A DNA stretch of 64,000 nt from positions 1-64,000 of IMG/VR virus record IMGVR_UViG_3300028829_003504. One strand, written 5' to 3'. A program made the position numbers and the translations under genes. The notes beneath the pieces were generated by a model, which saw only the letters and a list, made by a program, of their open reading frames with translations, was not told the DNA's origin and made no database searches. This document shows positions 4,803-53,142 of the stretch, in pieces; the first letter of the stretch is position 1; every line of letters starts with the position of its first letter.

Positions 4803-4836
4803 GGCTGAGTTGAAATACACTCAGTCTTTTTTTTTT
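4803..4836 (+). terminator. intrinsic terminator
   Basis: GGCTGAGT...ACTCAGTC hairpin followed by 10 T. Confidence 0.8.
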
Positions 4837-4849
4837 GTGGAGCGGTTTC

Positions 4850-5329: not shown

Positions 5330-5339
5330 TCCAAAATGA

Positions 5340-5380
5340 CCTCGACAGATGTAGTTTATGCTATATCCTCGAGGCTTTTT
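5340..5380 (+). terminator. possible terminator
   Basis: CCTCGA...TCGAGG stem followed by CTTTTT. Confidence 0.45.
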
Positions 5381-5389
5381 ACGTTTTAG

Positions 5390-6429: not shown

Positions 6430-6463
6430 TTTAGTTACATACTAAATAGAGGAGACATAGTAT

Positions 6464-8065: not shown

Positions 8066-8076
8066 CGGAGCATACC

Positions 8077-8586
8077 ATGCCTAAAGTTGAACTAAAAGAA
8101 CTTCAAGATAACGTTAAAGACCCGTTGCTATCTGATAACTACGAAATCGTTTTCGCTTTACCTTCCGGTATAGGCGGTGATGCAGCCTCGTTACGTGTGC
8201 AATGTAAATCTGCCGCAAAGCCGGGTAGTACTATCGAGCAACAAATGGTAGAAGTGTTTGGTCACACTACACGACACGCTGGACGTAAAACATTCAGTGG
8301 TACCATGTCAATTTCTTTCCAAGAGAACAGTACTGCAACAATTACTACTATCTTAGAAGATTGGCACGAACTTATCCGTAGTACGGAAGGTCAAATTGGT
8401 GCATTCAAATCTGAATACGCTACTAACGCTGAGTTCCATCTTCTTAACCAGAAGGGAGAGCCTATTCGTTCATACAAGATTCATGCGGTATGGCCTACAG
8501 AAGTTCCTGAAATTCCAATGGAACAATCTGCTACGGCAATTGAATTATCTGCAACATTCTCGTTTGACCACTATACTCCTATCTAA
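8077..8586 (+). CDS. tail tube protein (T4 gp19-like)
   Basis: 169 aa after the sheath; AGRKTFSGTMSISFQE...W...VWP...F.FD pattern. Confidence 0.85.
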   Translation: MPKVELKELQDNVKDPLLSDNYEIVFALPSGIGGDAASLRVQCKSAAKPGSTIEQQMVEVFGHTTRHAGRKTFSGTMSISFQENSTATITTILEDWHELIRSTEGQIGAFKSEYATNAEFHLLNQKGEPIRSYKIHAVWPTEVPEIPMEQSATAIELSATFSFDHYTPI

Positions 8587-8603
8587 CAGAGTATTCTCGG
8601 TAA

Positions 8604-8624
8604 AGGGGGCTTCGGCCCTCATTT
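8604..8624 (+). terminator. UUCG hairpin terminator
   Basis: GGGGGC-TTCG-GCCCTC-ATTT after the tube gene. Confidence 0.55.
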
Positions 8625-8660
8625 ACATTATCTTAAGCTAATTAAAGAGCAGCTATTTTT

Positions 8661-9335: not shown

Positions 9336-9338
9336 TCT

Positions 9339-9860
9339 ATGTCAATGAAGAAGACTCTTGAGTTAGCCAAATCACTTAACGAAGGAGATAAGACTCCCTT
9401 ACCTAAATGGTTATGGAAAGTCGAGTCAATGCCTGCCTTCGACGGTGTGACATTAGAGCCTGAATACATCCAACAGTTTGGACTACCTTTTCCTAAGTTC
9501 GATACAGGTAATCAAATTGAAGTCGCCGGCGCTACGTTAACGTTTCCCGGTAAAATAGATGTGTCAAGTGTCACTATGCTTATACACGAAGACAATAAAG
9601 TCCGTGCATTGAAATATATATTCCAATGGATGTCAAACATTAGAAACCCAGTTACTGGGGGTTACTTCTTACCATCTAGATACAAGAAAGGTATTAACGT
9701 AGTCCTCCATGATAACAAGGGTGATCCCTTAGCCAAAGCTTCTTTACGAGGCGTATGGCCTAGTGCCATCCAAGATTGGGAACTGGTATATAACGATGAT
9801 GGGTTTCATCAAGTCAGTGTTCAACTGGAAGTTGACGCTTCCTACTTAGAAATTCTGTAA
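9339..9860 (+). CDS. second tail-tube-fold protein (tube initiator-like)
   Basis: FPGK...HED...W...GVWP pattern parallels the tube at 8077. Confidence 0.7.
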   Translation: MSMKKTLELAKSLNEGDKTPLPKWLWKVESMPAFDGVTLEPEYIQQFGLPFPKFDTGNQIEVAGATLTFPGKIDVSSVTMLIHEDNKVRALKYIFQWMSNIRNPVTGGYFLPSRYKKGINVVLHDNKGDPLAKASLRGVWPSAIQDWELVYNDDGFHQVSVQLEVDASYLEIL

Positions 9861-9871
9861 AGGTAAATATA

Positions 9872-13189: not shown

Positions 13190-15757
13190 ATGTTAGACCC
13201 AATTGAACTCATGGCCGAACGCGCCGGCGAGTTGGAACAGACATACGAAAATAATGTAATGCTACCGGGGCTTCCTGCTCCGGGAGTGTTAGCGTTTAAA
13301 TCTGAACCCGGACTCCCTACACCTTATACAGGAAGAGGCAGTGTGGATAGAGGAGTAATCGAAGGCCAGCTAGTTCCAAATGATAACGCCGACCTTAGAC
13401 TTGCACCGTCGACTGGGATGGTATCGCCTGGTAACAACATGACGTTATCCGAACTGGACAACGTTTATGATGCAGCTACCGAAGAAGTCTTAGATGCCTT
13501 ATTCTTAATAGATGAAGACCTTAATAGCGGTCTTGATATCCTTTCAAACTCTATCACTACTTATAATGGTAAGAGTATGCGATTGCAAATACAGCAACGC
13601 GATATGATGAAAGAAATGGGTAAGATATTTAGAGATTGGTGGGAAGTAACGCAACGTGACCGCAACAAGCCAGAAGTTCTAAAGACTAAGGATACTGATG
13701 TAGGTCCAGGTACTGGCTTAGCTGTTGATACAAGTCAATCTACCAATAGCGATTCAGGTAGTCTACTTGATGGCCTAAACATAGGTGGTAGTAGATCAAG
13801 TAAAGACGATGACAAAAAGAATAACAGACGTAACGAGAAACGAAGCAAGCGACCTAAAGGTAAGTGGGCTGGACTGGCTTGGGATGTTAAAACTTATGGA
13901 GGTAAAGCATTAGACTTCGCTAAAGGTAATGCAGGCAAGTTAGCGTTAGGCGCTGGTGCAGGCTATTTAGCGTATAATGCTATATCCGATAATCGTGAAG
14001 AAGACGTCATGACTCCGGAGAAGGTATTGGCTAAACAGAAGGCTGAGCGTACTGGAACTATGATGGACCCTCAATCTGGTGAACAAATCACTTGGGATGA
14101 GTATGACAGTAAGTATGGGCAAGCGAAAACTAGCGAAATTAATGCCTCTACCACTGCGCCAGCTACCTCTACCACACCCGTATTAGAGCCAGGGCAGGCA
14201 TCAATTCCTAGTCGTGTACAAGACGTATCAGATGGCAGTTTTAGCACTTCTCAGATGATTGGTGCTGCGGGGTTGACAGCAATGGGAGGAACGGTAGCAG
14301 CACAGCACATGCGTAATAGGTCTACTATTCCTAAGCCTACAGCAGGTTTACTTCCACAGAGCCCAGATGTCCCCAAAGCTAATACTCCTAAGACTAATGC
14401 TAAAGTACCTAAGAAAGGCATACTTAGCACTTTGAAGAAAGTTCCTAAGCTAGGTGCCTTGAATGCGGTACTAGGTGCTGCTAATATATACGGTACGGCT
14501 ACTGATGATTCTCTTGATAGCAGAGAGAAGACTACAGGCATAGCTGACTCTGTTGGTTCTATGGGAGCTTATGCAGGTGCAATGGCACTAGGGCCTTTAG
14601 CGCCTTTCGCATTAAGTGCCCTTGGTATTTCTGATGGTATTAGTTTTGCAGGCGACTTAATGGGTTACGATATACCTAGTTTAAGTGGTGCTGCTGGAAG
14701 TATGGTGAGCGGTGCTGCTGGAGGAATCTATGATGGTGCCTCTGCTGTCGGTGACTTCTTCGGATTCGGCGATGACCCTACAGAAGAAAATGTACAGACG
14801 GCCGCAGCCCTGACTAGTACTAATGCTAGCATACCTACTGGCGGTGACGAGTTTGGTGATATTAATATGGCACCACCAGTAGCTGCAACCCGTAAGTCTG
14901 AGAAGATTAAAGAACTCCAAAAGGTCGTCAGTAACAATCAAACTAATATGATTACTACCAATCCTGTGCAGGCTGTTGTTAATAAACAGAAGCAGGATGA
15001 AGGTATAGGTAAAGCCCTATCTTTATTAAAAGATAAGCCAGCACTTGAGCGTAAGAGTTCTGAATCCGCAGTGACTAGTAGTTTGTTTACCGCTGCGTCT
15101 GCAATGAGCCCGGGTCTTAGCTCAGGTGTAAATGCCATGTATGGAAATACTGATATATCTGATATAACCAACATGTATAGTTCTCCTACTACAGTGGCTA
15201 ATAATAGAAATACTTCCGGAGGTAGCGACTCAGTTATAAACGAAGGCTCCCTATATAGTAATAAGAAAATACACGAGACTCAAAGTTTCTTTGGTAGTAT
15301 GATGGACAGAGTTAGTTCTGCTGCAAGTAAAGCTTACGACTTCACACCAATGGGAATGATTAGTAACCTCAAGACATCGCCTGCTATTTCCAATTCACTG
15401 AGCAGCGTATCGAATAGTATACTAGGCGCCGACCCTAGTACGGTTAATACCAATCAGTCTCAGGCAGGTACTTCGAGTGTTGATACTGTTCAGGTAAATG
15501 CTAACACGGTTGAAGTTCTTCCTAAAGTCGAAAGCACTGAACGTTCTAATTTTACTACTATAAAAGAAGCATCTGCACCTATGGTTGATAGCACACCGCA
15601 AGCTCCTATCGTAGTACAAGCACCTGCTCCTAAAACCGCACCTAAACAGCATACTCGAATTATCAAACAAGTTGTTCAACCAAGACCGACTATTGATGAT
15701 ACACCTACCATGATTGGTAACGGCGGTCTTGGCCTTATAGGCAACACACTTGTATAG
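13190..15757 (+). CDS. putative tape-measure/baseplate hub-like protein
   Basis: 855 aa, G/A/S-rich with hydrophobic G/A helices, located among tail genes. Confidence 0.5.
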   Translation: MLDPIELMAERAGELEQTYENNVMLPGLPAPGVLAFKSEPGLPTPYTGRGSVDRGVIEGQLVPNDNADLRLAPSTGMVSPGNNMTLSELDNVYDAATEEVLDALFLIDEDLNSGLDILSNSITTYNGKSMRLQIQQRDMMKEMGKIFRDWWEVTQRDRNKPEVLKTKDTDVGPGTGLAVDTSQSTNSDSGSLLDGLNIGGSRSSKDDDKKNNRRNEKRSKRPKGKWAGLAWDVKTYGGKALDFAKGNAGKLALGAGAGYLAYNAISDNREEDVMTPEKVLAKQKAERTGTMMDPQSGEQITWDEYDSKYGQAKTSEINASTTAPATSTTPVLEPGQASIPSRVQDVSDGSFSTSQMIGAAGLTAMGGTVAAQHMRNRSTIPKPTAGLLPQSPDVPKANTPKTNAKVPKKGILSTLKKVPKLGALNAVLGAANIYGTATDDSLDSREKTTGIADSVGSMGAYAGAMALGPLAPFALSALGISDGISFAGDLMGYDIPSLSGAAGSMVSGAAGGIYDGASAVGDFFGFGDDPTEENVQTAAALTSTNASIPTGGDEFGDINMAPPVAATRKSEKIKELQKVVSNNQTNMITTNPVQAVVNKQKQDEGIGKALSLLKDKPALERKSSESAVTSSLFTAASAMSPGLSSGVNAMYGNTDISDITNMYSSPTTVANNRNTSGGSDSVINEGSLYSNKKIHETQSFFGSMMDRVSSAASKAYDFTPMGMISNLKTSPAISNSLSSVSNSILGADPSTVNTNQSQAGTSSVDTVQVNANTVEVLPKVESTERSNFTTIKEASAPMVDSTPQAPIVVQAPAPKTAPKQHTRIIKQVVQPRPTIDDTPTMIGNGGLGLIGNTLV

Positions 15758-31601: not shown

Positions 31602-34600
31602 ATGCTAGGAAATCAAATAGCCAGAGCCATAGGCACACTTAAGTCAACTGGAATACTTTCAAATTTAACTGTAGACTACCAGAGTCAGAGTGCCTCCGTA
31701 CAACTCCTCACTAGTACCTCAAGTGCTGATGAAAACGGCTTTAATAGAACTACGGTTGCTACTCACATGATGCCAGAACGTGGCTACCTGATTAGAACTG
31801 AGCAAGTGTATCAGGATGGTGATGAAGACAACGAGTTTGAAATGAAAACTGCGTTCACCATGAATGAAGAATATATAGGAGACCCTGAGTGGGCTGAACG
31901 TCTATACAATATGGGTATTGTTCCTCAACTAGCTAGCCCTAAACATAAAGTATGTTCAGTAGGCTACTGTGAGAAAGAAGACAAATGGTACGGCTGGAGC
32001 CATAGAGCGATTAGTGGTTTCGGAGTAGGTAGTGAGGTGACCAGAGGTCATTGTGCATATAAACCTTCTACTAAGGCAGAATTCCTACAAAGCTTAGATG
32101 ATTGGTATCGCCACAACGGCAACGAAGTGAATGTTATTCCTACTGACGATGGTGCTATCGTAAACACTACATCTTTTCGAGTGACTGATGGTAAGCCTTT
32201 ACGATATACCCACATTGAAGAGTTTAAACCAGGTCGCGGTTCATTTAAGGTTTGTGATATGGATGAGGCTAAGACACTAGCCTTGGATTTCGCCGAATCC
32301 GTCAGCGCTGCTGCGGTTAACGTAGATTCCGCTATAGTACAGGATTCGGTACTCAGTGAACTGTCTAAACGTTTTCAAGAGATGTCGGCACGTATGCTAA
32401 CGAAGGCCAATCAACTACTTCGTATACAGAGATTCCTCAATGTAAATACAGATGGAGACTTAGACGGTCCAGGCTGCGCCGATAAATTTCATACTAATCT
32501 TAAATCAACCATAGAAGCCCTTAACGGTCCTAATGACAGTGACGCTAACTTTGGTCTTACTACACGTAAAGCTTCTTTGGTTAATATACCCTCAGGTGAT
32601 AATCAACCTGATGTAGGAACTCCTCCTAAACCAGTCGAAGAAGTAGGCCCTGTTGTAGGGGAAAAAGACGACGATGAAGATTACACGGATAGACTAGATA
32701 GGCTTAAAGCTCGACACGGTAGTACAAACTACATTGAATCAGAAATACAACAACGTACCATTGAGATGTTCTCCGGAGCTGAAAGTCCCGTTAGCCTTAG
32801 CATGGAGAGTGAGGAATCAGAAGAAATACTGGCTGAGTGCGAACACAGTCGTATTATCCGTAACGTTATCCACTTTGACGAGTATGCCCCTGCCTCGGGT
32901 TTACCCTTTGTTAAAAACAAAGAAAATGGTAACACGAGTAGCATCCTGGATGCCAATTTGTCGGATTATAAGGTCATGGACGAACGTTGTGCTTCTATAA
33001 TACAAGAAGCCCGACTTAAAATTATATCTAATCGAGAAGCGTATAAGGCCCGAACTGAAAAGCAGAAATCAGAAGATGACAACTGGTCAAAGGTCATCAA
33101 TAAGATGCTCACTGGGTCAGAGTTGAATGAAGGTCCAGTTAGATCCAGTAGAACGAGCGGTGTTGATTCAGGTATGGCCTCAGAAGCAGCGGCAAAGTTT
33201 GCACCTACTGAGTTTAGTTGGTTCAAGTATATAGGTAAGAAGACACGCAGCTTCGATCACCATAAGCAAGACGTTGAACTTGAAATCGAAACTAATGAGC
33301 GTTTCGGTATTATGTATAATTCAAGACTTAAAGCCTACATTATAGTTGAAGCATCTATGTTTGGCGCAAGGGGAGAGGTGTGGGAATTCCGCATTAACGA
33401 AAAGGAACTTAAACTTCTAGTTAAGTCTAGTAGACCTTTCAATGGTAAAATCGGCGGACAGAAGATTGTTAAAGGTGAACCTACTAACTTAAACCTGTTT
33501 ACTAATCGTAAGCAAGTAGAAGTTAAACCGTTGCAGGATACAGGAATGGTTGCTCCTAATCGACGAGTTAAAAAGACGGGAGGTGTTAAGATCATTAAAC
33601 GCCTTGATATGGATGATGTTGAAGACGGTGTTAAGATTAAACGTAAGCCTGTCTATATTGGTGTGTTCCAACCTAGCGGTAGTAGTGACAAGTATAACTT
33701 GGTGACCAACGAGAAACTATCCGAATTGAAGACTGACCTACAATCTAGAATGGAAGCCTTGCCTGATATCGGCTCGTTTGCTACTATATACCAATTACGT
33801 TCTGATAATCGTTTCGTCATTAAGGCATTGAAGGCTAAAGTACCTAAGATACAACCAGCACATAAATCCATACTTGATCGTGAGTCTCTCATAAAGCCTG
33901 TTGAGTTCAAAGGTAAAAATATACGTTTACGTAATGATAGTGTACCACTACCTCATTTCCAACCAGGTGCTCCTGAGTTTACCGAACCTATGTTCTTCGG
34001 TAACCAGACAAACGTGTTGGCTGAGATTCGTGACTCCATAGTATTGGATAAATACTTTAGTGGTGCATTCACTTTGCTTGACCCTAAAGGTTATATGCAA
34101 AAGAAATCTTACAAGCGATCGTTAAACCAAGGTAAGGCTAGTGAGCGTCGAAGCAAAATGGGTATTAGAGATTTAAAGTCGAAAGGTATGGTGTTCTTAG
34201 AACTAGTTGCTTTGCATGATTCAAATTCTTTTGAGGACGAAGCTTATGCCTTACTTATACGTTTACGTAAACAGTTCGGTAAGAAGATTATAGGTCAGGT
34301 CGAAGTGAAGCGTTTGAAGCTAGATGGTATCAATAAAGAGTACCTAACAGTTAGACTAATCGCTAACATTAAGCCAGTGAGCGATGAAATTAAAAAACGA
34401 TCACTTAAACTGTATGACCTAATTGAGTCTAATAAGCTTTCTATAGGAATCAATCAATATGGATTTATGGTAGGTGACAAGCTAATTCCTTGTGCTGTGA
34501 TTGAACCCGTGTATACGGAAGGTAGCATTAAGGTCCAACCTACTAATGCTCAGCTACGTCCAGAAGTTGTGTCCGATTTATATGACTTAAATGGTACTGT

Positions 34601-34613
34601 TAAACTATTCTAG
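31602..34613 (+). CDS. large multidomain protein, probably virion-internal
   Basis: 1003 aa; SVGYCEKEDKWYGWSHRA domain, acidic linker with S-x-S motifs, then a basic domain homologous to 8661..9335. Confidence 0.65.
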   Translation: MLGNQIARAIGTLKSTGILSNLTVDYQSQSASVQLLTSTSSADENGFNRTTVATHMMPERGYLIRTEQVYQDGDEDNEFEMKTAFTMNEEYIGDPEWAERLYNMGIVPQLASPKHKVCSVGYCEKEDKWYGWSHRAISGFGVGSEVTRGHCAYKPSTKAEFLQSLDDWYRHNGNEVNVIPTDDGAIVNTTSFRVTDGKPLRYTHIEEFKPGRGSFKVCDMDEAKTLALDFAESVSAAAVNVDSAIVQDSVLSELSKRFQEMSARMLTKANQLLRIQRFLNVNTDGDLDGPGCADKFHTNLKSTIEALNGPNDSDANFGLTTRKASLVNIPSGDNQPDVGTPPKPVEEVGPVVGEKDDDEDYTDRLDRLKARHGSTNYIESEIQQRTIEMFSGAESPVSLSMESEESEEILAECEHSRIIRNVIHFDEYAPASGLPFVKNKENGNTSSILDANLSDYKVMDERCASIIQEARLKIISNREAYKARTEKQKSEDDNWSKVINKMLTGSELNEGPVRSSRTSGVDSGMASEAAAKFAPTEFSWFKYIGKKTRSFDHHKQDVELEIETNERFGIMYNSRLKAYIIVEASMFGARGEVWEFRINEKELKLLVKSSRPFNGKIGGQKIVKGEPTNLNLFTNRKQVEVKPLQDTGMVAPNRRVKKTGGVKIIKRLDMDDVEDGVKIKRKPVYIGVFQPSGSSDKYNLVTNEKLSELKTDLQSRMEALPDIGSFATIYQLRSDNRFVIKALKAKVPKIQPAHKSILDRESLIKPVEFKGKNIRLRNDSVPLPHFQPGAPEFTEPMFFGNQTNVLAEIRDSIVLDKYFSGAFTLLDPKGYMQKKSYKRSLNQGKASERRSKMGIRDLKSKGMVFLELVALHDSNSFEDEAYALLIRLRKQFGKKIIGQVEVKRLKLDGINKEYLTVRLIANIKPVSDEIKKRSLKLYDLIESNKLSIGINQYGFMVGDKLIPCAVIEPVYTEGSIKVQPTNAQLRPEVVSDLYDLNGTVKLF

Positions 34614-37202: not shown

Positions 37203-37991
37203 TTAGTTCTTGCGTTTTTTAACAGAAACGCCCATCGCTAATAATGCAATACCCATTAGCGCTAATGGTTTTGGTTCTGGTACTTCTACGGCTGTAATAC
37301 TACCGACTGTAACATCAAAAGACCGCACTCTATGTCCTTCAGGCAGGTCTTCACCACCGATAAAGTCTAGGTATTCTGCAGGTGCGGATACATTACCGCC
37401 TACTACGAGTGCCGTAACGTCTGTAAGATCTGCAAACTCAAATACTCCATAATTCAAGAAAGCATTATGAGGAGTCACGTAATCATCATGGCCGGGGCCT
37501 AACACGGTAACCTTTTCAGATTTAGTACCTGCGTCCCACCAAATTTCAACTTCGAATAGGTAGTTTTCATCTGCAAAAACTGTCTCAGTCATGAATGCAC
37601 TAAGCCCTTCTTCCAGGAAATTAACCCCACGCCCAGTAACCAAGTCCATTAAACCGCTTGTGTTGACTTCGGACGAATTGTCTTCACCATCCCACTGCAT
37701 CCAGAAACTTGCGTCCACTGTTGACTGTGCTGAAAAAGACATATTGCCATCGGCTACACCTATCGCGGCAGTATATTCTTCATTCAAGGCACCGTAGTTT
37801 GTAACGACTAAGTCACGCTCGCCTCCCAAGATACCTGCGCCGAATACTGAACTCGAAACAGTCTCACCGACTTCCGCCGTTATGAATTCTTGGTCTGTAT
37901 TAAAAGTATCTATGATACCCGCGTTTGCTACACTTGACATCGAGACTAGTATCACTGCCAGTACTAACAGTATGTTAATAATAGTTTTCAT
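37203..37991 (-). CDS. PEP-CTERM protein (exosortase substrate)
   Basis: Signal peptide ending VANA-G, acidic beta-rich body, C-terminal VPEP + hydrophobic helix + KKRKN. Confidence 0.9.
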   Translation of the reverse strand: MKTIINILLVLAVILVSMSSVANAGIIDTFNTDQEFITAEVGETVSSSVFGAGILGGERDLVVTNYGALNEEYTAAIGVADGNMSFSAQSTVDASFWMQWDGEDNSSEVNTSGLMDLVTGRGVNFLEEGLSAFMTETVFADENYLFEVEIWWDAGTKSEKVTVLGPGHDDYVTPHNAFLNYGVFEFADLTDVTALVVGGNVSAPAEYLDFIGGEDLPEGHRVRSFDVTVGSITAVEVPEPKPLALMGIALLAMGVSVKKRKN

Positions 37992-38498: not shown

Positions 38499-39236
38499 TT
38501 AGTTTAAGCCAAGGTGCACTTCAATTGCGTTGGTAAGTGTAGCCATACCAACTTCGACTGATGCAAATATGACCGTGTCACCTGCCTTTAAATCAAGAAA
38601 TATGCTAGGTTGGGTGCGAACAAGTATAAATTTACCGTCCTTCTTAGTTACCATATCCATATCCTGCATAGCTATACTGACGGTACTGGCGTTCCAATCG
38701 TGTTTACTTTTAACGTGTGTCAAGAACGAAGCCCAAGGAATCATTAAGTCACCTGTGATTTTAGGAATGGTAACATCTGTACTTTGGGTTACTGGCTTTC
38801 TTACTGGTATGCGAGCCCGGGCATGCCTAGCACTTAGCTTAGGTTCTACCTCCGGCTTAGTTGGTTCTTCTGAAACCTCCACGGCAGCTTTAGTGTTTTG
38901 CCTATCGTTAAGTTTTCCTAACGTAGAAGCTTCTTTAGACCAAGCTTTCTTTGCGCGGTCCTTAACTTGAGCTTCAACCTCAAGCTTAGCCTTCATCTCT
39001 TCTCTATTCTTTTTAGTGAGAGTAGAGTTCCACCAGCCATTCATTTTAATTTCATTAAGTTCAACTAATCCTGATTTCTGTAGCAATTCAATAACTTTCT
39101 TACGTTTGATTTTCTTAGTCACGGTTAAGTCATAGATTACGTCGAAGGCTTTTGACAATTGTACGTAAATAGCGCTTTCGTGTTCAGGCTCTGTCTCATT
39201 CGCTAATTCTGCGAACTTTCTTAGATCTAATTCCAT
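38499..39236 (-). CDS. hypothetical protein
   Basis: 245 aa ORF. Confidence 0.65.
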   Translation of the reverse strand: MELDLRKFAELANETEPEHESAIYVQLSKAFDVIYDLTVTKKIKRKKVIELLQKSGLVELNEIKMNGWWNSTLTKKNREEMKAKLEVEAQVKDRAKKAWSKEASTLGKLNDRQNTKAAVEVSEEPTKPEVEPKLSARHARARIPVRKPVTQSTDVTIPKITGDLMIPWASFLTHVKSKHDWNASTVSIAMQDMDMVTKKDGKFILVRTQPSIFLDLKAGDTVIFASVEVGMATLTNAIEVHLGLN

Positions 39237-39247
39237 AAGGAGGCTCC

Positions 39248-39793
39248 TTAATATACGTGTTTATGTATGCAACCTAAAGCTCTAGTAGCGGCTTGGCTAA
39301 GGTTATCGTTTGTAATTCTGTATGTGTACTTGAACGCGTGGCACACTTCGTCTTCGGCAATATGGATACGTCTTTCGATTTCATCTTCTTTATCACCACG
39401 CTTCTTAAGACGCTTTCTTAAAATATCAATACTAGGAGGTTCTATGAATATAGAAACCACATTGTCGTACTTTTCAATAAAGGCATCAGCGCCATTTATA
39501 TCTAATATGATAATAGGATGTCTGTCACTGCTCTCCACGTCCTTAAGGGATGATATAGTAGTACCGTACAGGTTACCGTTGTATTCATTATACTCAATGA
39601 ATTCTTCCCGGGCGGCCATCATTTCAAAGCTGCTTCGCTCCATAAAATGATAGTCTATGCCATTCTTTTCGTCGTCGCGTTGGTTACGACTTGTATGAGT
39701 TACAACCGTAGCTAGACTTTTATTCCACGTTAAAAGTTTCTTTAGTATAGAATCTTTTCCTACACCACTAGGCCCTATTAGTACTATTATCAT
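39248..39793 (-). CDS. gmk: guanylate kinase
   Basis: GPSGVGKD, THTSR..R..E.NGIDYHF, YNGNLYGT, IFIEPPS. Confidence 0.93.
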   Translation of the reverse strand: MIIVLIGPSGVGKDSILKKLLTWNKSLATVVTHTSRNQRDDEKNGIDYHFMERSSFEMMAAREEFIEYNEYNGNLYGTTISSLKDVESSDRHPIIILDINGADAFIEKYDNVVSIFIEPPSIDILRKRLKKRGDKEDEIERRIHIAEDEVCHAFKYTYRITNDNLSQAATRALGCIHKHVY

Positions 39794-39796
39794 CGA

Positions 39797-40099
39797 TTAC
39801 TCAGTTTTAATTTTTGTTATTTTTACGGCGCCTGAATCATTAACAACGACTTCAAATTTGAAGTCGTTCAGTCTGCACCATTCCTCTATCAACCAGACAG
39901 CCTTAGTGCTATCTCCGTGATAACTTACGTTTACATTTTCGAACTCAGCTATTATGAATTTGGCAGTAGCTAGAGTGAAATTAGAAGTGCTTTGGGGATA
40001 ACGTAGTTCAAACTTAGGATTAGGTATAAGTACATCGAAGTTATTGCCTGATAGTTCTTTATTTAGAAAAGATGGTTTGACTGGCATCAGAACTCCCAT
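39797..40099 (-). CDS. miniature tail-tube-like protein
   Basis: LSGNNFDVLIP and VNVSYHGDSTKAV-WLIEEWCRL align with LLSDNYEIVFA and MSISFQENSTATITTILEDWHEL of the tube at 8077; start may be 40087. Confidence 0.55.
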   Translation of the reverse strand: MGVLMPVKPSFLNKELSGNNFDVLIPNPKFELRYPQSTSNFTLATAKFIIAEFENVNVSYHGDSTKAVWLIEEWCRLNDFKFEVVVNDSGAVKITKIKTE

Positions 40100-40730
40100 A
40101 CGTCATTTCTATAGCAAGTTCAGGATCACCCCCACTAGCGGTGTCTACGTTATTATGCAAATGGCAATCCTTAAACAGCATTTTAGTAATAGGTTTACCT
40201 CCGTACTTGCGAGTACACTTACCTCTAGGTAACTTAGCACCTTTAGAAAACGCATCGTTCTTCATCAAATAATATCCTTCAGGACAATCTTCTTGCCAGG
40301 GTACTGAGTATATATCGATGTCAGTACCTATAGGAGGAACGTCTTTCTGCTCAATAGGATTGACCATATCAACCCATCTGTTGAAGATACTCCCAATAGG
40401 CTTATGTTCTTCAAATAATACATCGAATGAACCTCGTATACTTGCTGACTTATCTCGGAATCCCATAGGCTCTTGAGGTCTATCTAGGATAGCTACATTA
40501 ACCTTACTATCTCTACTTATAGCAGTTGACATAGCGCGACCAAAAGTAGCGTCATGCCCTAATATAACAGGCTTGAACTCCGAGCATTTACCTATTACCT
40601 TAGGTAAGCTATTAAACTCAATAGTAACGCCACTTAGTTTTAATTCAGGTCTTTTCAATCGATCCAGTGCCTGTTCGTGTATCTCTGCGGACCAAACATC
40701 CTTGGGTGTACCACCAGTCTTGTTAGTCAT
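40059..40730 (-). CDS. protein with a tail-tube-like C-terminal half
   Basis: GSFDVLFEE...IGSIFNRWVDMV...GKPI...ELAIEMTY parallels GTMSISFQE...ITTILEDWHELI...GEPI...ELSATFSF of the tube. Confidence 0.5.
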   Translation of the reverse strand: MTNKTGGTPKDVWSAEIHEQALDRLKRPELKLSGVTIEFNSLPKVIGKCSEFKPVILGHDATFGRAMSTAISRDSKVNVAILDRPQEPMGFRDKSASIRGSFDVLFEEHKPIGSIFNRWVDMVNPIEQKDVPPIGTDIDIYSVPWQEDCPEGYYLMKNDAFSKGAKLPRGKCTRKYGGKPITKMLFKDCHLHNNVDTASGGDPELAIEMTYGSSDASQTIFSK

Positions 40731-41613
40731 TTAGTATATCCCAAAGTCGCTGTTTAGTAATTGTCGCACCTGCTGCATTCGTATGACCACCGCCTCCAAA
40801 TGCCTCAGCATGGTCGCGGGCAGAATGGTCGGCACTCCTAAAGCTCAGGTTAACTTCATCGTTCTTATCAATAGCGTAACACATAATGGTATCGTGTTTA
40901 TCTTTAATAGATTCAGCCAACTCACTAATAATATGTCCGGGGCAGTTAACTGCAAATACATTACCTTTACTTAGCTTAATAACACTACCACGCGCAACAT
41001 GGTCGCTAATCATTTTATCAACGTAGCTTAAAACCGCTTTACCTTGTTGAATAAACTTAACATAGAAGGCGCTATTTACATTAACCTTGTTTAAGGTGAA
41101 GTCTGAGTAAAGAGCAAGAGATATCTCACCGATAGGAGTTGCTTGCAGTGCAAGGTGTACAGCTTTAGCATTGGGGAAATCTTGCTGCCATCCTTTACGC
41201 CATAGGTCTCTTCTACCTACATCCTCCACTATCGGGTGGTAAGGTGTTTTGTATAGATAATCCCAAGCTAGCATAGCTCCTGAACGGTCGATGTCGAGTA
41301 CTAGTTCTACTGACTCAGGTATAGTACCTTCATCGGACATTAATTTAAGGGCATCTATGGCTTTACCGTGATGATCCATCATAGTAACATGATTAGACTT
41401 GGTTGCCAGTAAGGTAAGGTCTGCGCCGTGAAAAGAAAAGTCAACAACAAAGATTCGATGGTAAACACCTTCGTCGATATCAGGTAGGGGCTCACTGTAT
41501 TTAACAGCCTGCATTATAATTTCGTGGTCTTTACTTCGGAAGTAAGAGTGGACAACTGCTGCTGCGGTTTTACCGTCGTTACATTGGGCATGGTACATAA
41601 CTAGAATTTTCAT
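40723..41613 (-). CDS. DHH/DHHA1 phosphoesterase
   Basis: YH..C.DG, VVDFS, DHH, SGAMLAW, SFRS, GGGGH..AAG. Confidence 0.9.
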   Translation of the reverse strand: MKILVMYHAQCNDGKTAAAVVHSYFRSKDHEIIMQAVKYSEPLPDIDEGVYHRIFVVDFSFHGADLTLLATKSNHVTMMDHHGKAIDALKLMSDEGTIPESVELVLDIDRSGAMLAWDYLYKTPYHPIVEDVGRRDLWRKGWQQDFPNAKAVHLALQATPIGEISLALYSDFTLNKVNVNSAFYVKFIQQGKAVLSYVDKMISDHVARGSVIKLSKGNVFAVNCPGHIISELAESIKDKHDTIMCYAIDKNDEVNLSFRSADHSARDHAEAFGGGGHTNAAGATITKQRLWDILND

Positions 41614-41622
41614 AAATACTAC

Positions 41623-42291
41623 CTGATATAGTTTTCCTATTAAGTTAAAATTTGACGGCTAACAGATCGCTACATGCTACCGAGTATGCAGTGGAGGGCT
41701 ACTACCTTTGAATCCGGTAGCCCGAAATGCGATAACCTGTCTCCCTAACTGGGTCGTCCTGGACATAATTATCCATTCAGTTTACTATAATACGATAGCA
41801 GTTAGAGGTCTGGACCTAGGATTACATTGAGGGAAAAGGGCTAGAAAGTTACCCGATAAAACTCTATATTGTAACCAACTGATTAAATGATCAGTTCCGA
41901 TACACATGACAGTCAGAGGCTAGACTCTGTTCGCTACTCTGACTGGGACTCAAAATTAGGTTGACGATTAACAAACTCTGCTTATCATGAAGCTAAGGAA
42001 CACGTCTCCTTAAGGCAGCTATAAATAACCACCTTTCAGGGACACGCTGCTTGCGATCTCGTCTTCTCAGATTGCCTTTGGTTGAGATTAAGTAATTGCC
42101 TACTAAGCCTGGCCCCCGCTAAAAAGCATCCGCCAGTTATTTTCTCTATGATACACACTGAGTTCTGGGCTAAAGATATATCGACTGATTGAAGGATGGT
42201 TGGGCACCCTAACTGCTGTCATTATACCAATACCTTATATCCGAGGCATTCCGATTCGGTCGATAGTCTATCAATTAAACTAAACTATCAG
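41623..42291 (+). ncRNA. large (about 670 nt) highly structured non-coding RNA, class unrecognised
   Basis: About 715 bp ORF-free gap with more than 10 helices including long-range pairings; G-U wobbles favour the + strand. Confidence 0.65.
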
Positions 42292-42328
42292 TGAGCAGAT
42301 TTTTACATTTGAGTTTAAATTACATTCG

Positions 42329-43277: not shown

Positions 43278-44729
43278 CTACGCAGCTAACAGTTTTTCAT
43301 AGAAACCGTAGGCCACTTCCCTAACTTCATCGAAGGTTTGATTGCGAAGAAGCTCGCCGGTATTCCAGACAGGCTCAAGAAGCCCGCTATTTATACGGTT
43401 ATCAACTTGCCTCCAAACGATATCACCAAATTCATTAAACTCTACGCAGAAGTAACCTTCTTTAGAATGTTTATTCGGATCAGCTTTAGGACGTTTGCTG
43501 GTTTTAGTAGGAACGCCGTTAATAGTCATCATGCTTGCTTTCATAGCGAAGCCACCATCGTCACGGCCGTGAGCTTGTAGTAGTTTACCGCCTTGACCAA
43601 ACACTAAATTTAAAGCGCTGAGCTTTTTGCTTCTCATTAAGTCTTGGATATCAGTGATAACTTGTACGTCAGTTCCGTCACCCTGTATTACACGAATGTA
43701 ATCAGGTAGAACTTTATAGCCTTTTCTATTGATCTCGTATCCGAAGATTTCCATCAAACGCTCAACTATACGTACAGGTTCGTTAACTGCATGACCTGAG
43801 TCAGGGCGTATTATCAAGCAACCCTTTCCCTTACCTTCTTTGAATGCTGCAATGACTTCATCTTTAAGTTCTTCCCAGTAGCCTAAAGCACGGTCTGTGT
43901 CATAGGTATCAGGTAGTACACTTACTTTGTCGCCGTTTGCTACATACGTTTTAAGTAGGAAAGAGAAAAGTTCTTTTTCACGGGCCTCACCCCAAGATAG
44001 AACTACGTTATGCTCAATAGCAAAAACAGAATATGCTGACATACCCTCTTTAGTGCCGTAAGCTTGCTCAGCAGTCCATGTACCTTCAAGAGTATCACTA
44101 CCCTTAGAAGTAACTTGGTGAGACATTCCACCAACTGATGCACCTTCACCACAATTTACACCTCTAGCACCGAAGTCATTAAGAGCAAAATCCATATAGC
44201 CGGCGATTAGATCATCGTCTATACTTTCATTGGCAAATTTACCTATAATAACTTTCTGCTCTAGACTCTTAGTTGCAACGGTAATAGAATACCAGATGCG
44301 CTGAATTAAAGCTTCGAAGTACATTGGTAACCACGCAAACTCTTTATCAGTGTTGGTAATAACCATCAGTGGAGTTTTCTGAGCCGTTACAGTACCTTCA
44401 GGTAGTGCGCGGAACTCAAGTGGAAGTTTACCATCATGCTTCGTAACAATAAGTTCCCAACCTTTACGATTGAACTTAGCGCCGTGCCGCAATGCGAAGT
44501 CCTCGCAGATATCAATCATTTCCATTGTGATACGTTCACTAAAGTAACGCTTAAGGATATATTGCAATCCAAAGAACATTGTTTTAGTCATACCGTAACG
44601 GCTTTCAAGATAGACGTAAGAGAATTCTAAACCTTCAACCAATTGTTCGTAGTGACCCAATTTGTAGCTGTCGGTTCTCAAGATTAATGGTACATCTGTA
44701 ATTAACATATTAGTGTTAAAAAGTTTCAT
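43278..44729 (-). CDS. nadV: nicotinamide phosphoribosyltransferase (NAMPT)
   Basis: TDSYKLGH, FFGLQY, DFGARG, GSDT, EHNV, DTYD, IRPDSG, IQGDG, FGQGGKLLQ, FAMKAS, KHSKEG. Confidence 0.95.
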   Translation of the reverse strand: MKLFNTNMLITDVPLILRTDSYKLGHYEQLVEGLEFSYVYLESRYGMTKTMFFGLQYILKRYFSERITMEMIDICEDFALRHGAKFNRKGWELIVTKHDGKLPLEFRALPEGTVTAQKTPLMVITNTDKEFAWLPMYFEALIQRIWYSITVATKSLEQKVIIGKFANESIDDDLIAGYMDFALNDFGARGVNCGEGASVGGMSHQVTSKGSDTLEGTWTAEQAYGTKEGMSAYSVFAIEHNVVLSWGEAREKELFSFLLKTYVANGDKVSVLPDTYDTDRALGYWEELKDEVIAAFKEGKGKGCLIIRPDSGHAVNEPVRIVERLMEIFGYEINRKGYKVLPDYIRVIQGDGTDVQVITDIQDLMRSKKLSALNLVFGQGGKLLQAHGRDDGGFAMKASMMTINGVPTKTSKRPKADPNKHSKEGYFCVEFNEFGDIVWRQVDNRINSGLLEPVWNTGELLRNQTFDEVREVAYGFYEKLLAA

Positions 44730-47336: not shown

Positions 47337-48413
47337 TTAGTCTTGTTGAGTGAAACCTGTTCCGTAACCACTAGCTAACATGTTTTGAATAATGAAGTAG
47401 TGATCCGCGTACAAGGCTTTACTCATTCTACGTACTTGAGCAAAAGGGAACCAACGAGCTTCTTTAGCATCGTCCATCCCTTTTACCTTAGGTAATTTTG
47501 AATCAGTAAGAATGAAAGATCCAACATGTGTGGTGAAATCACCACGGTCATCTCGCATAGGGTCTTCAAACATCTTCTTACCCCGATATGCCTGTTCTAG
47601 CGCACGAGGCGGTACGTTAATGTCTGTTTCTTCTTTAAGCTCACGTAAGATACAATCTCTTGCATACTCACCTGGGTTCTTAAAGCCACCAGGTAAAGCC
47701 CATTGGTCTTTGCCTGGGAAGTCTCTGCGTTTAATCAACAATAAGTGACCGTGGCAAACTACAAGTGCATCTCCCGTTATGAAATTAATTCCGTGAGGCA
47801 GATCCTTGTAGTCATTCTTGTATGCTAGGACTGAGCGATTGTGACCTACCAACCACTCGTACTCCTTTGTTTTACGAAACTTCTCCAAAAACACATTAGT
47901 CGAAGTTGGACAATTCGCAAAAGAAACTTGAGGATATACTGCGTTGTTGAAGTATATCTCACGTAACGGAGTTGCAGATATAGCATCCAAGTTATCTACA
48001 TGATGTTTCTTCCAACGAGGAAAGCCTCTAAGATAATAACTAGTATTATCTTTCAAGTGACCAACAAGTGCAATGTCATCGGGAAGACCCAAATGCTGCG
48101 CATGGTCATGGGCTAAACGTTGTACTTCTGATTCCCAATCATATTCAACATAAAGGTAATCGTTGAGCGGCTTAACTTGACATTTGAAGGATTTGGTTCC
48201 TGTCAGTGCAGGTCGAATCATTTCTAAACGTTCTTCGTATGAGAACGGATTTGCCAAGCTACGACTACGGTTGATTGATCCAATAAGTATCAATACATTG
48301 TCAGCAATCTTGCACGCTTCATCAATTAAGTAATCGTGACCGTTATGGTATATATGACTACGCATAATCACAACAGCCAAAGCTACCTTACCTTTTACTT
48401 TAAAATCTTTCAT
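47337..48413 (-). CDS. bifunctional NMN adenylyltransferase / ADP-ribose pyrophosphatase (NadM-Nudix)
   Basis: HNGH, GS...RS..NPF...ER, GHLKDNTSYYL, ISATPLR, WALPGGF...RELKEET, DDAKEARW, DH. Confidence 0.93.
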   Translation of the reverse strand: MKDFKVKGKVALAVVIMRSHIYHNGHDYLIDEACKIADNVLILIGSINRSRSLANPFSYEERLEMIRPALTGTKSFKCQVKPLNDYLYVEYDWESEVQRLAHDHAQHLGLPDDIALVGHLKDNTSYYLRGFPRWKKHHVDNLDAISATPLREIYFNNAVYPQVSFANCPTSTNVFLEKFRKTKEYEWLVGHNRSVLAYKNDYKDLPHGINFITGDALVVCHGHLLLIKRRDFPGKDQWALPGGFKNPGEYARDCILRELKEETDINVPPRALEQAYRGKKMFEDPMRDDRGDFTTHVGSFILTDSKLPKVKGMDDAKEARWFPFAQVRRMSKALYADHYFIIQNMLASGYGTGFTQQD

Positions 48414-51135: not shown

Positions 51136-53142
51136 CTATATAGCTACTTCACCATCTAGCTTGGGGCCATGTTCATAATTATGGAGAACAAAATGGTCAC
51201 CTGTCAACTCGTCGAAACTCTCAAAGGGCTTGACTTCTAATGAAGGCATAGGTTTAACTTCTTGCTTCATCTGTTCTTCAAATAGATCTCGATGGAAGTC
51301 ATAGATATGATAGTCACCAAACATGTGAAAGAAGTTACGTGCTGCCATACCTGACTTCTGGGCAAAGGCCATAAGTAACGCACTGTAACTGCCTATGTTA
51401 AAGGGAACTCCGATGAACCAATCCGCGCTGCGCTGGTACATTGTCATATCAATGAAGTACTTAGGTACACCTTTAGAATCGAAGAATTCACCGACGACTC
51501 TTAGATGTTCCTCTTTATCGGCACAAGACATAGAGAATAACTCTTGACTAATTTTACTTTTGATTGTAACCACTACCATAGGGTTCTCAGGATTATAGTC
51601 TAAAAGACCTTCTCTCTCCATGAAGTAAGAGTCTTGCATTAACTCCGCAGTACGTATGTTCGACCAATGTTCATAGCGGTCGGAGTGACTCATAGGACTT
51701 GTACCTAATTGGAACATCATGTGACAGGGAGGTAACGCTTGCTGACCGACCGTTGCGTTTTCATGAGGCTCAAAATATCTTACTTTAGGAGCATCCACGT
51801 AGTCAAGTAAAGCTTCGAGTAATTCCTCCTCGTTCAGACCTTCGGGGAGATCTGAAGGTCCTCCATTGTGTAGGAGACTTTCGCAGTAATCACGCGCTTG
51901 CATTATGGGTGCTTCACCTCCAGAGTCAAGACGCCGTTCGGCCTCATCCATCCACTTCACATTAGCCATTACTTTTTCAATTTCACCGTCCAGATAGTGC
52001 TCTTTGCGATCTACTTGGTTTGCAAATGCTACTTGCGTAACAGGAGTTAAGCCTGGGTTCAAGGCAGTAACTAACATACGGCGGTCATTAGGATTGTTCT
52101 TCAAACTTTCGGCAACGGCATCCAGTTGATCAAACTTCTTAGTATACACAGTATGCTCGGCATCCCATTTACCTTCAATACCTAACGCATTAAGAACTCT
52201 ATAGTAAGTTTCAACGAAAGCGTTGTACTCAGGTAACTCTAAGACATTGTCCCCGAAGTACATTTGGATAGTGCCTTCACTGAGATCACGCCCAGAAGCT
52301 TCGGTAGTAGTAATTATACTAGAGCGCATGCCGTTTTGTTCAAGATAGCCCTGGAAGTCTTCGAGAGTGAAGTCGCCATTTTTAATCTTAGCCCGTAGTT
52401 CTTCATCCATTCTACTAGTTTGGTCAAAAGAGCCTTGTGCAATATAGTTCTGGTTTATTAAGAAGTCAATCATACCAGTATTAGTATCAGCCACGGTGCG
52501 TGTGTCTTCCCATGCTCGCCATTGTGCTCCGTATACAGGACCTAGATTCCCATTGTTGTCAGCCCAACCGTCCCATATTTTAGCACCTAATGTTTTAATG
52601 TTCGTTTCACCTCGACATAGCCAACCCAGCTCTTTCATGATACCTTTAAAGGCTGTGAACTTAGTAGTGACTAGAGGGAAACCATCACGCATATCGAATT
52701 GCATCATGTGGCCGAACAGCTTAGTAGTAGGCGTTGTAGTTCTGTTTCCGCTACGCGCTCCTGCGTAAAGAATGTCCTGAGCCGCAGATAGATACTGTAC
52801 ATCGACATGTCTTTTATTAGGATGATTCTGCCAGGTATTAGGTACTTCTTTTTCTAACGTACCTGATTTAACAAAAGTAATAACAGCATTACGGCCATCA
52901 TAATTACTGTACTGCGCCTGTACTACCACAAGAGGTCCACGTAATGTGTAAGGGCCTGTACGGTCTTCGTAGTGGCAATGCTGTATTAAATCACCTTCCT
53001 TGAAGCGGCTAGACATATCGCGGTCTATATTAAAGAAAGAAACAATATGGTAATGATCAATGTCAGTAGCCATCAGGTAATCACATTTAAGATGGACTGA
53101 TTTACCCATCATAACTTGATAAGGTATTTTAACTGATTCCAT
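51136..53142 (-). CDS. thyA: thymidylate synthase with N-terminal extension and three large insertions
   Basis: NRT, FPLVTTK, EL.W, IWDGWA, LGPVYGAQWR, DRRM, LPPCH, YQRSAD..GVPFN, GDYHIY. Confidence 0.92.
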   Translation of the reverse strand: MESVKIPYQVMMGKSVHLKCDYLMATDIDHYHIVSFFNIDRDMSSRFKEGDLIQHCHYEDRTGPYTLRGPLVVVQAQYSNYDGRNAVITFVKSGTLEKEVPNTWQNHPNKRHVDVQYLSAAQDILYAGARSGNRTTTPTTKLFGHMMQFDMRDGFPLVTTKFTAFKGIMKELGWLCRGETNIKTLGAKIWDGWADNNGNLGPVYGAQWRAWEDTRTVADTNTGMIDFLINQNYIAQGSFDQTSRMDEELRAKIKNGDFTLEDFQGYLEQNGMRSSIITTTEASGRDLSEGTIQMYFGDNVLELPEYNAFVETYYRVLNALGIEGKWDAEHTVYTKKFDQLDAVAESLKNNPNDRRMLVTALNPGLTPVTQVAFANQVDRKEHYLDGEIEKVMANVKWMDEAERRLDSGGEAPIMQARDYCESLLHNGGPSDLPEGLNEEELLEALLDYVDAPKVRYFEPHENATVGQQALPPCHMMFQLGTSPMSHSDRYEHWSNIRTAELMQDSYFMEREGLLDYNPENPMVVVTIKSKISQELFSMSCADKEEHLRVVGEFFDSKGVPKYFIDMTMYQRSADWFIGVPFNIGSYSALLMAFAQKSGMAARNFFHMFGDYHIYDFHRDLFEEQMKQEVKPMPSLEVKPFESFDELTGDHFVLHNYEHGPKLDGEVAI

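What the first reader, a model, noticed from the sequence alone, without database searches (positions are those of the whole stretch)
39797..40730. Two adjacent degenerate tail-tube homologs in a nucleotide-metabolism operon
39797 (about 100 aa) matches the N-terminal strand and central helix of the tube at 8077 (VNVSYHGDSTKAV-WLIEEWCRL vs MSISFQENSTATITTILEDWHEL) but lacks the long loop and the C-terminal strands. 40059 matches the central and C-terminal tube elements with an insertion. Both lie between gmk and the DHH gene, on the opposite strand from the tail genes. Non-polymerising tube mimics could block tube-sensing NADases such as DSR2 (inference), which would complement the NAD salvage genes nearby.
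Basis: partly seen in the sequence, partly recalled or inferred. Interest (0 to 1): 0.7.

Follow-up and report, generated by a model that had tools for sequence, protein, structure and literature searches.

The report
Orphan gene pair, one weakly tube-like
Two small conserved genes sit between a DHH phosphoesterase gene and a guanylate kinase gene in a marine jumbo phage; the larger shows weak family-level signs of descent from the phage's tail tube protein, the smaller shows none, and nothing tests the idea that they act as decoys.

Summary
Both ORFs are real, co-conserved genes on the minus strand: 40059-40730 (223 aa) and 39797-40087 (96 aa, with its own ribosome-binding site and a 29-nt overlap). 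They lie in a DHH - 223 aa - 96 aa - gmk - 245 aa operon that is syntenic in three other metagenomic phages.

No profile or language-model evidence supports it.

The window's own 223-aa protein is also at chance level pairwise (P 0.27). Its family is not:
- The family HMM's best non-self hit among all 847 genome ORFs is the tube protein (E 0.063).
- Homologue P0011 aligns to tube residues 21-114 (P 0.0012).
- Two members land on tail-tube clusters by language-model features (0.93 and 0.95).

The claimed C-terminal match is not supported. The "insertion" is the best-conserved part. It is an independent basic domain (PE..Y..N.AF..LPRGKC) that also occurs in a 112-aa protein downstream of another DHH gene, and in a zinc-ribbon protein next to DHFR.

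AlphaFold failed (pLDDT 30 and 44), so the fold is unproven. The surroundings do look like an anti-defence and NAD-salvage island (Tad6 domain, NAMPT, NMNAT-Nudix). The decoy function remains pure speculation. Moderate interest.

The parts
40059..40730 (-). P0002, 223 aa. Composite orphan protein: an N-terminal W..RLKRP motif, a weakly tube-like middle region, a basic LPRGKC domain and a short C-terminal tail.
   Evidence: ORF. Homologues are P0008 (40% identity) and P0011 (34%) in syntenic loci L001 and L003. No Pfam or PHROG hit.
40356..40517 (-). P0002 residues 72-125: the region aligned to tube residues 41-102 (a strand plus the helix with the conserved Trp, W119).
   Evidence: hhalign A2 vs tube alignment A4, P 0.011. 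The A2 HMM hits tube 62-104, E 0.063 over 847 ORFs. 0 of 300 shuffles reach the score.
40164..40304 (-). P0002 residues 143-189: basic 'VPW..PE.YYL.N.AF.GAKLPRGKC.RKYG.KPI.K..F..C' domain, the best-conserved part of the family.
   Evidence: Invariant columns in A2. Found alone in the 112-aa P0013 (E 9.5e-5 in 1.8 billion proteins). Related to P0017 (hhalign P 0.0037; P0013-P0017 BLASTP E 5e-4; alignment A6).
39797..40087 (-). P0005, 96 aa. Small partner protein that overlaps the end of P0002 by 29 nt in the +1 frame.
   Evidence: Homologues are P0006 (56%), P0007 (53%) and P0014 (41%), always directly downstream of the P0002 homologue and upstream of gmk. No support for tube similarity.
40093..40097 (-). 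GGGAG ribosome-binding site, 5 nt upstream of the ATG at 40087.
   Evidence: Sequence. A purine-rich equivalent (GGGAA, GGAGG, GGTGAG) and ATGCC are conserved in all four loci.
40723..41613 (-). NrnA-type DHH/DHHA1 phosphoesterase. Its stop codon overlaps the P0002 start.
   Evidence: Pfam DHHA1 3e-9 and DHH. phrog_4771, 1e-55. Nearest solved chains are NrnA and RecJ-like.
39248..39793 (-). Guanylate kinase, starting 4 nt after the P0005 stop.
   Evidence: Pfam Guanylate_kin on the syntenic genes. ORF.
38499..39236 (-). 245-aa orphan protein, last conserved gene of the operon.
   Evidence: Syntenic homologues in L001, L002 and L003. No family hit.
8077..8586 (+). Genuine tail tube protein (the comparison partner).
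   Evidence: phrog_45 tail tube, 7e-33. 50% identical to the PaBG tube.
9339..9860 (+). Second gp19-like tube paralogue in the tail module.
   Evidence: phrog_45, 3e-15. PF06841, 5e-4.

Best explanation
The two ORFs are a translationally coupled gene pair. They are specific to a small clade of marine PaBG-like jumbo phages and are expressed from a five-gene operon: NrnA-type DHH phosphoesterase, P0002, P0005, guanylate kinase and a 245-aa orphan.

P0002 is a composite, fast-evolving, probably non-virion protein with three parts:
1. A short basic N-terminal motif.
2. A region of about 90 residues that is probably a remote derivative of the N-terminal two-thirds of the phage's own gp19-type tail tube protein.
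3. A basic, Cys-containing 'LPRGKC' domain of about 50 residues. This is the functional core, and it recurs in other proteins encoded next to nucleotide-metabolism genes.

P0005 is an unrelated small alpha/beta protein that acts with P0002.

The pair most likely serves as an accessory (substrate-binding, tethering or regulatory) factor for the DHH/gmk nucleotide-processing module. The basic domain would contact phosphates of nucleotides or short oligonucleotides, or the enzyme itself. The tube-derived part would provide a beta-rich, possibly oligomeric scaffold.

Shown: gene reality, synteny, coupling, domain recurrence, and weak tube similarity. Inferred: tube ancestry, non-virion status, binding role and oligomerisation.
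For: - Synteny of DHH - 223 aa - 96 aa - gmk - ~250 aa in the window, L001, L003 and (partly) L002, with conserved overlaps of 29, 29, 29 and 11 nt and a separate RBS for the small gene.
- P0002 is the most divergent gene of the operon: 37% and 34% identity, against 56% and 49% for DHH, 65% and 57% for gmk, and 77% and 64% for Dam.
- Tube relation, profile level: the A2 HMM's best non-self hit among 847 ORFs is the tube (E 0.063). phmmer with P0011 alone also ranks the tube first (E 0.16). The same region matches the PaBG tube (P 6e-4). hhalign gives P 0.011.
- Tube relation, pairwise: Smith-Waterman of P0011 against the tube gives P 0.0012 over tube 21-114. 7 of 24 family-by-tube pairs have P<0.05.
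- Tube relation, language model: ESM-Atlas feature hits for P0002 (0.93) and P0011 (0.95, 179 shared features) go to tail-tube clusters (Phi812_tail_tube, Phage_T4_gp19, DUF2001).
- Domain recurrence: P0013 (112 aa, mostly this domain) lies directly after a DHH gene end in L007.
- P0017 (genome 189711-190349) carries the motif and a similar N-terminal W..(K/R)(R/K)P motif. It lies next to DHFR and an NT5C nucleotidase. Its downstream neighbour is homologous to the gene downstream of P0013.
Against: - No structure: AlphaFold2 gave pLDDT 30 (P0002) and 44 (P0005), so the fold was never tested.
- No Pfam or PHROG tube hit at E<=1-10.
- BLASTP sees nothing.
- The similarity rests on one strand-helix motif plus one favourable homologue.
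- An HMM built without the window's protein ranks the tube only 8th.
- The atlas tool warns that 4-10% of shuffled proteins score 0.9 or more. P0011's recognition value (2002) is below its 2300 mark.
- The tube's C-terminal strands have no detectable counterpart, so a complete tube fold is doubtful.
- No binding, oligomerisation or enzyme link was tested. The co-folding job gave no verdict.
Confidence: 0.35

Rival explanations
1. No tube ancestry at all. P0002 and P0005 are lineage-specific orphan proteins of the nucleotide operon. The resemblance to the tube is a chance match of a common beta-strand/amphipathic-helix (..F.E....l..W..l.r) motif, and the language-model hits reflect generic features of small beta-rich phage proteins.
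For: - The window's own pairwise comparisons are at chance level.
- There are no Pfam or PHROG hits.
- The match does not extend when the insert is removed.
- The same helix motif gives a weak hit in an unrelated 855-aa protein.
- The atlas warns of false positives at 0.9-0.95.
- P0017 and P0013 share the N-terminal motif and/or the LPRG domain without any tube-like middle.
Against:
- The alignment positions are colinear and consistent across methods.
- Two members only 34% identical to each other both map to tube clusters.
Confidence: 0.33
2. One reading: the proteins are non-polymerising tube mimics made early in infection. They occupy tube-sensing immune sensors (DSR2-like SIR2 NADases) and so complement the NAD-salvage genes nearby.
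For: - Weak tube likeness of P0002.
- Fast divergence relative to neighbouring genes.
- Location in a region with a Tad6 (Thoeris inhibitor) domain protein and NAMPT plus NMNAT-Nudix.
- DSR2 is known to be triggered by a tail tube protein and blocked by a phage protein, DSAD1 (abstracts of PMC10981675 and PMC11087589).
Against: - The best-conserved part is not tube-like. It recurs in non-tube proteins and tracks DHH and nucleotide genes.
- The small protein is not tube-like.
- There is no sequence similarity to any solved chain.
- DSR2 sensing is documented for a Bacillus siphophage tube, whereas this is a marine myophage with a gp19-type tube.
- No published tube decoy was found.
- The host and its defences are unknown.
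Confidence: 0.07
3. P0002 (with or without P0005) is an immune-signal sponge. It would be a beta-rich ring-shaped oligomer whose basic LPRGKC pockets sequester nucleotide second messengers or their linear products, working with the adjacent DHH enzyme that degrades them.
For: - A basic conserved motif.
- An anti-defence neighbourhood.
- Obligate linkage to a DHH phosphoesterase of the NrnA type, which acts on short or linear oligonucleotides.
- Known sponges such as Lockin are beta-rich hexamers with positively charged interface pockets and have no domain annotation (10.1101/2025.07.12.664507).
Against: - There is no sequence similarity to any solved chain, a set that should include any deposited sponge structures such as Tad1, Tad2, Acb2 and Lockin.
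- At 223 aa it is larger than typical sponges.
- Oligomeric state and pockets are unknown.
- The motif also sits next to DHFR and a nucleotidase, which suits metabolism rather than immunity.
Confidence: 0.1
4. P0002 is a true minor virion protein (for example a tube terminator or tail completion protein) encoded away from the tail module, much as T4 gene 3 lies next to the dNMP kinase gene 1 (own knowledge, not tested here).
For: - Tube-like feature hits.
- Tube-fold paralogues commonly serve as tube initiators and terminators (general knowledge).
Against: - It lies on the opposite strand, tightly coupled to enzyme genes.
- There is no PHROG tail family hit.
- The head-to-tail module 4835-10618 already holds three unassigned neck-position genes plus a second tube paralogue.
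- PaBG and the Erwinia relatives, which share the tube at 42-50% identity, lack the gene.
Confidence: 0.07

Closest known systems
T4 gp19-type tail tube proteins (Pfam PF06841, phrog_45), including this phage's own tube at 8077-8586
   Same: P0002's family shares a colinear strand-plus-helix motif with the conserved helix Trp. In homologue P0011 it also shares the N-terminal strand (FDVAIVHPEGLG against YEIVFALPSGIG). Language-model features place two members among tube clusters.
   Different: There is no HMM hit to any tube family and no detectable C-terminal strands or WP motif. An extra basic domain of about 50 aa and an N-terminal extension are present. The gene lies in an enzyme operon on the other strand, not next to the sheath gene. 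P0005 shows no relation.
DSAD1 (anti-DSR2 protein of phage SPbeta)
   Same: Only the proposed role: a phage protein that would occupy a tube-sensing NADase (abstracts).
   Different: No sequence similarity to any solved chain, a set that should include the DSR2-DSAD1 entries. The phage type and host differ, and no functional data exist.
Phage nucleotide sponges (Lockin, Tad1, Tad2, Acb2)
   Same: Small, unannotated phage proteins in anti-defence neighbourhoods. Lockin is beta-rich and hexameric with basic pockets. P0002 has a strongly basic conserved motif.
   Different: No sequence similarity. The oligomeric state is unknown. P0002 is larger, and its conserved domain also occurs next to DHFR and a nucleotidase.
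P0013 and P0017 (uncharacterised jumbo-phage proteins that share the LPRG domain)
   Same: The PE..Y..N.(A/V)F..LPRG domain. P0013 also follows a DHH gene. P0017 shares the N-terminal W..(K/R)(R/K)P motif.
   Different: P0013 has 112 aa and lacks the tube-like middle. P0017 has a shorter middle region and a C-terminal zinc ribbon (phrog_1474, DUF4379-like).

Membership tests
T4 gp19-type tail tube (PF06841 / phrog_45) | Significant match to the family HMM | tested here: not met
   No Pfam or PHROG tube hit for P0001, P0002, P0008, P0011, P0006, P0007 or P0014 at E<=1-10. PF06841 on the whole genome finds only 8350-8520 and 9612-9830. My own 8-sequence tube HMM gives P0001 E 1.1 and P0002 E 21 over 847 ORFs.
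T4 gp19-type tail tube (PF06841 / phrog_45) | Tube fold (beta-sandwich with a flanking helix that forms hexameric rings) | tested here: inconclusive
   AlphaFold2 on 3- and 4-row alignments gave pLDDT 30 and 44. The ESM Atlas models have pLDDT 0.29 and 0.46. Foldseek on the small-protein model gave nothing below E 0.05 and no tube.
T4 gp19-type tail tube (PF06841 / phrog_45) | Remote profile or feature similarity to tube proteins | tested here: inconclusive
   P0002 family: HMM top non-self hit is the tube, E 0.063. hhalign P 0.011. P0011 Smith-Waterman P 0.0012. Atlas feature scores 0.93 and 0.95 to tube clusters. P0005 family: nothing.
T4 gp19-type tail tube (PF06841 / phrog_45) | Encoded in the tail module next to the sheath gene | tested here: not met
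   Both genes lie about 30 kb away on the opposite strand, between the DHH and gmk genes.
T4 gp19-type tail tube (PF06841 / phrog_45) | Presence in virions | not testable with these tools
   This is an uncultured phage from a marine metagenome. Only the source DNA runs hold the sequence.
Anti-DSR2 proteins (DSAD1-like) / tube decoys | Sequence similarity to DSAD1, or binding to a tube-sensing NADase | tested here: not met
   Profiles A2 and A3 against all PDB chains at E<=10 gave no relevant hit. Binding itself cannot be tested here.
Nucleotide-signal sponges (Lockin, Tad1, Tad2, Acb2) | Sequence similarity to a known sponge; a homo-oligomer with a basic ligand pocket | tested here: inconclusive
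   No sequence similarity to solved chains. Oligomeric state and pockets could not be modelled. A basic conserved motif is present.
Single frameshifted gene (P0002+P0001 fusion) | No independent start; the frame relation is not conserved | tested here: not met
   A separate RBS plus a conserved ATGCC start occur in four loci. P0011 stops only 11 nt into the small gene.

The most novel reading that the evidence does not exclude
A tail-tube-derived protein has been taken out of the virion and fused to a new basic nucleotide- or phosphate-binding domain. Together with a small partner and a DHH phosphoesterase, it acts in an anti-defence island (Tad6 domain, NARP2-like NAD synthesis) either as a decoy for tube-sensing immunity or as a ring-shaped sponge for immune nucleotides.
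Probability: 0.12. Interest if true: 0.75.

Novelty: new variant of a known kind. Interest (0 to 1): 0.35.

Why it matters
If the tube ancestry holds, this would be a clear case of a virion building block being re-used as a soluble, early-operon protein. That is the raw material for structural-protein decoys or ring-shaped ligand binders in the phage-host arms race.

Independently of that, the LPRGKC domain is a new, recurrent module. It is tied to DHH phosphoesterase, guanylate kinase, DHFR and nucleotidase genes in marine jumbo phages, and it may mark an unrecognised accessory function in phage nucleotide processing.

If the resemblance is chance, the finding is simply an ordinary pair of orphan genes.

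Tried and rejected
- Structure prediction: AlphaFold2 with the only available alignments (3 and 4 rows) gave unusable models. Foldseek (BFVD) on the small-protein model gave no significant match and no tube match. The P0002 model was too poor to search.
- Co-folding of P0002 with P0005 (ESMFold2): no verdict, score 0.01. This is not evidence either way.
- Homologue searches were exhausted. The 5.8-billion protein index found only the window's own protein for P0002, and only P0008 and P0011 besides it when queried with the family profile. Exhaustive HMMER over 1.8 billion representatives found 5 proteins. INPHARED phages gave none. IMG/VR, JGI metagenomes and GTDB genomes gave only self.
- The 5692-aa hit P0012 is a repeat-driven artefact.
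- PaBG and PhiEaH1 have DHH genes but no homologue of the pair next to them.
- Removing the insert to see whether the tube alignment extends into the C-terminal strands produced no gain.
- The tube-HMM hit on P0017 falls in its zinc ribbon and is spurious. The A2 hit on 13190-15757 is only the helix motif.
- Fusion by frameshift was rejected.
- There are no tRNAs, Rfam families, or promoter or terminator excess in the region.
- No RNA runs hold the locus, so expression timing is unknown.
- The ORF-free 715 bp upstream of DHH shows no remnant of the 210-aa gene found there in L001.

Full report
**What is there**

The window is the first 64 kb of a complete 261,788-bp virus record with direct terminal repeats. 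It is a marine, uncultured relative of Pseudomonas phage PaBG. Its tube protein is 50% identical to the PaBG tube, and only the source marine metagenome holds the DNA.

On the minus strand, five tightly packed genes form an operon:
- a DHH/DHHA1 phosphoesterase of the NrnA type (40723-41613);
- a 223-aa ORF (40059-40730, P0002), whose ATG overlaps the DHH stop codon;
- a small ORF (P0005);
- guanylate kinase (39248-39793);
- a 245-aa orphan (38499-39236).

The small ORF was listed from ATG 40099. An ATG at 40087 is preceded by GGGAG at a 5-nt spacing and gives the 96-aa product that public gene calls use.

**Are the genes real, and are they one gene or two?**

The 96-aa protein has homologues of 56%, 53% and 41% identity. 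The 223-aa protein has homologues of 40% and 34% identity. All come from three other metagenomic phage contigs with the same gene order: DHH, large ORF, small ORF, gmk, then a protein of about 250-280 aa.

The junction between the two ORFs is conserved: a purine-rich RBS, ATGCC, and overlaps of 29, 29, 29 and 11 nt in the +1 frame. They are therefore two translationally coupled genes, not a frameshifted single gene.

It scores 32, and 12% of shuffles reach that score. Other tests agree:
- The family HMM against eight diverse tube proteins gives P 0.06-0.27.
- hhalign gives P 0.055 over 11 columns at a different place.
- The ESM-Atlas feature search returns nothing.
- My tube HMM ranks the small protein first among non-tube ORFs, but at E 1.1 and with a different, incompatible alignment.

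This is chance level.

For the 223-aa protein, the window's own sequence is also at chance level (BLASTP E 0.33; shuffle P 0.27). The family as a whole is not:
- An HMM of the three members, searched against all 847 ORFs of the genome, gives the tube protein as the best non-self hit (E 0.063). It aligns the strand-plus-helix segment to tube residues 62-104.
- The same segment matches the PaBG tube (P 6e-4; 2 of 300 shuffles) and, more weakly, a T4-like gp19.
- hhalign places P0002 72-125 on tube 41-102 (P 0.011).
- P0011 aligns colinearly with tube residues 21-114, including the N-terminal strand (P 0.0012 from 10,000 shuffles).
- 7 of 24 family-by-tube pairs have P<0.05.
- Independently, language-model features of P0002 (0.93) and P0011 (0.95) point to tail-tube clusters: Phi812_tail_tube, Phage_T4_gp19 and DUF2001.

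There are several caveats:
- No Pfam or PHROG tube hit exists.
- An HMM built without the window's protein ranks the tube only 8th.
- Removing the insert does not extend the match.
- The atlas tool itself warns of false positives in this score range.
- AlphaFold2 failed (pLDDT 30 and 44), so the fold was never tested.

I put the probability of tube ancestry for the middle of P0002 at about one half, and for P0005 at well under one fifth.

**The "insertion"**

It is an independent domain:
- It makes up most of a 112-aa protein, P0013 (E 9.5e-5 against 1.8 billion proteins). P0013 again lies directly downstream of a DHH gene in another phage contig.
- It recurs in P0017 (genome 189711-190349). 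P0017 also shares the N-terminal W..(K/R)(R/K)P motif, ends in a zinc ribbon, and lies beside DHFR and an NT5C nucleotidase.
- The gene downstream of P0013 is homologous to the gene downstream of P0017.

The conserved linkage is therefore to nucleotide-processing enzymes, above all DHH. It is not to tail genes or NAD genes.

**Context**

- NAMPT at 43278-44729.
- An NMNAT-Nudix fusion at 47337-48413. Together with NAMPT this resembles the NAMPT + NMNAT route known as NARP2; the papers read here describe NARP2 only as PRPP-based NAD synthesis, and the enzyme assignment is from my own knowledge.
- A 1003-aa protein with a Tad6 (type I Thoeris inhibitor) domain at 31602-34613 (E 2.7e-42).
- A Dam methylase, a thymidylate synthase and a UvrD helicase.

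Tad3-7 are reported to bind the ThsB TIR protein (PMC13728456). The region therefore has an anti-defence flavour.

P0002 is also the fastest-diverging gene of its operon, which is compatible with host interaction but does not prove it.

**Mechanism**

My best reading (0.35) is that P0002 is a composite, non-virion accessory factor of the DHH/gmk module. Its basic domain would bind phosphates of nucleotides or oligonucleotides, or the enzyme itself. Its middle part would be a relic of a duplicated tube gene, and P0005 would be its partner.

The rivals are:
- the same role without tube ancestry (0.33);
- a nucleotide-signal sponge working with DHH (0.10), by analogy with the beta-rich hexameric Lockin sponges;
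- a stray virion protein (0.07).

The decoy idea has nothing against it in principle. DSR2 is triggered by a tube protein and blocked by DSAD1. But it has no specific support here: there is no similarity to any solved chain, no published precedent was found, and the conserved core of the protein is not tube-like.

**Novelty and verdict**

The pair belongs to no described family. At most it is a new, non-structural variant of the tube fold joined to a new domain. At least it is a pair of orphan genes. Interest is moderate (0.35). It would rise sharply if a structure confirmed a tube-derived soluble protein with an anti-defence role.

Noticed in passing
window 31602-34613 (+): A 1003-aa protein with an N-terminal Pfam Tad6 domain (type I Thoeris inhibitor, E 2.7e-42) and a KMPT-N domain. 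Homologues of 1006-1008 aa flank the syntenic loci L001 and L003. It is a giant fusion carrying an anti-Thoeris domain.
   Followed up: partly
window 43278-44729 (-) and 47337-48413 (-): NAMPT plus a cytidylyltransferase-like (NMNAT) - NUDIX fusion. This resembles the NARP2-type NAD+ synthesis pair used by phages against NAD-depleting defences.
   Followed up: partly
genome G000:C1:189711-190349 (+), outside the window (L019:3712-4350): P0017, 212 aa. It shares the N-terminal W..(K/R)(R/K)P motif and the PE..Y..N.AF..LPRG domain with P0002, ends in a treble-clef-like zinc ribbon (phrog_1474), and lies between a peptidase-like gene and DHFR/NT5C nucleotidase genes. Its downstream neighbour (190337-191050) is homologous to the gene after P0013 in L006 and L007.
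   Followed up: partly
window 37203-37991 (-): A 262-aa protein with an N-terminal signal-peptide-like segment and a C-terminal PEP-CTERM-like sorting motif (VPEP, a hydrophobic stretch, then KKRKN). This is unusual for a phage gene. It has no Pfam or PHROG hit.
   Followed up: no
window 51136-53142 (-): A thymidylate synthase ORF of 668 aa, more than twice the usual length. The Pfam match is split into three stretches, which suggests an inserted element or an extra domain.
   Followed up: no
window 41614-42328: 715 bp upstream of the DHH gene have no ORF of 60 aa or more, no tRNA and no Rfam hit. GC content equals the window mean. The syntenic phage L001 has a 210-aa gene at this position, of which no remnant is detectable.
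   Followed up: partly
window 9339-9860 (+): A second gp19-like tube paralogue (phrog_45, 3e-15) lies two genes after the main tube gene. PaBG also has two adjacent 'putative tail tube' genes.
   Followed up: partly
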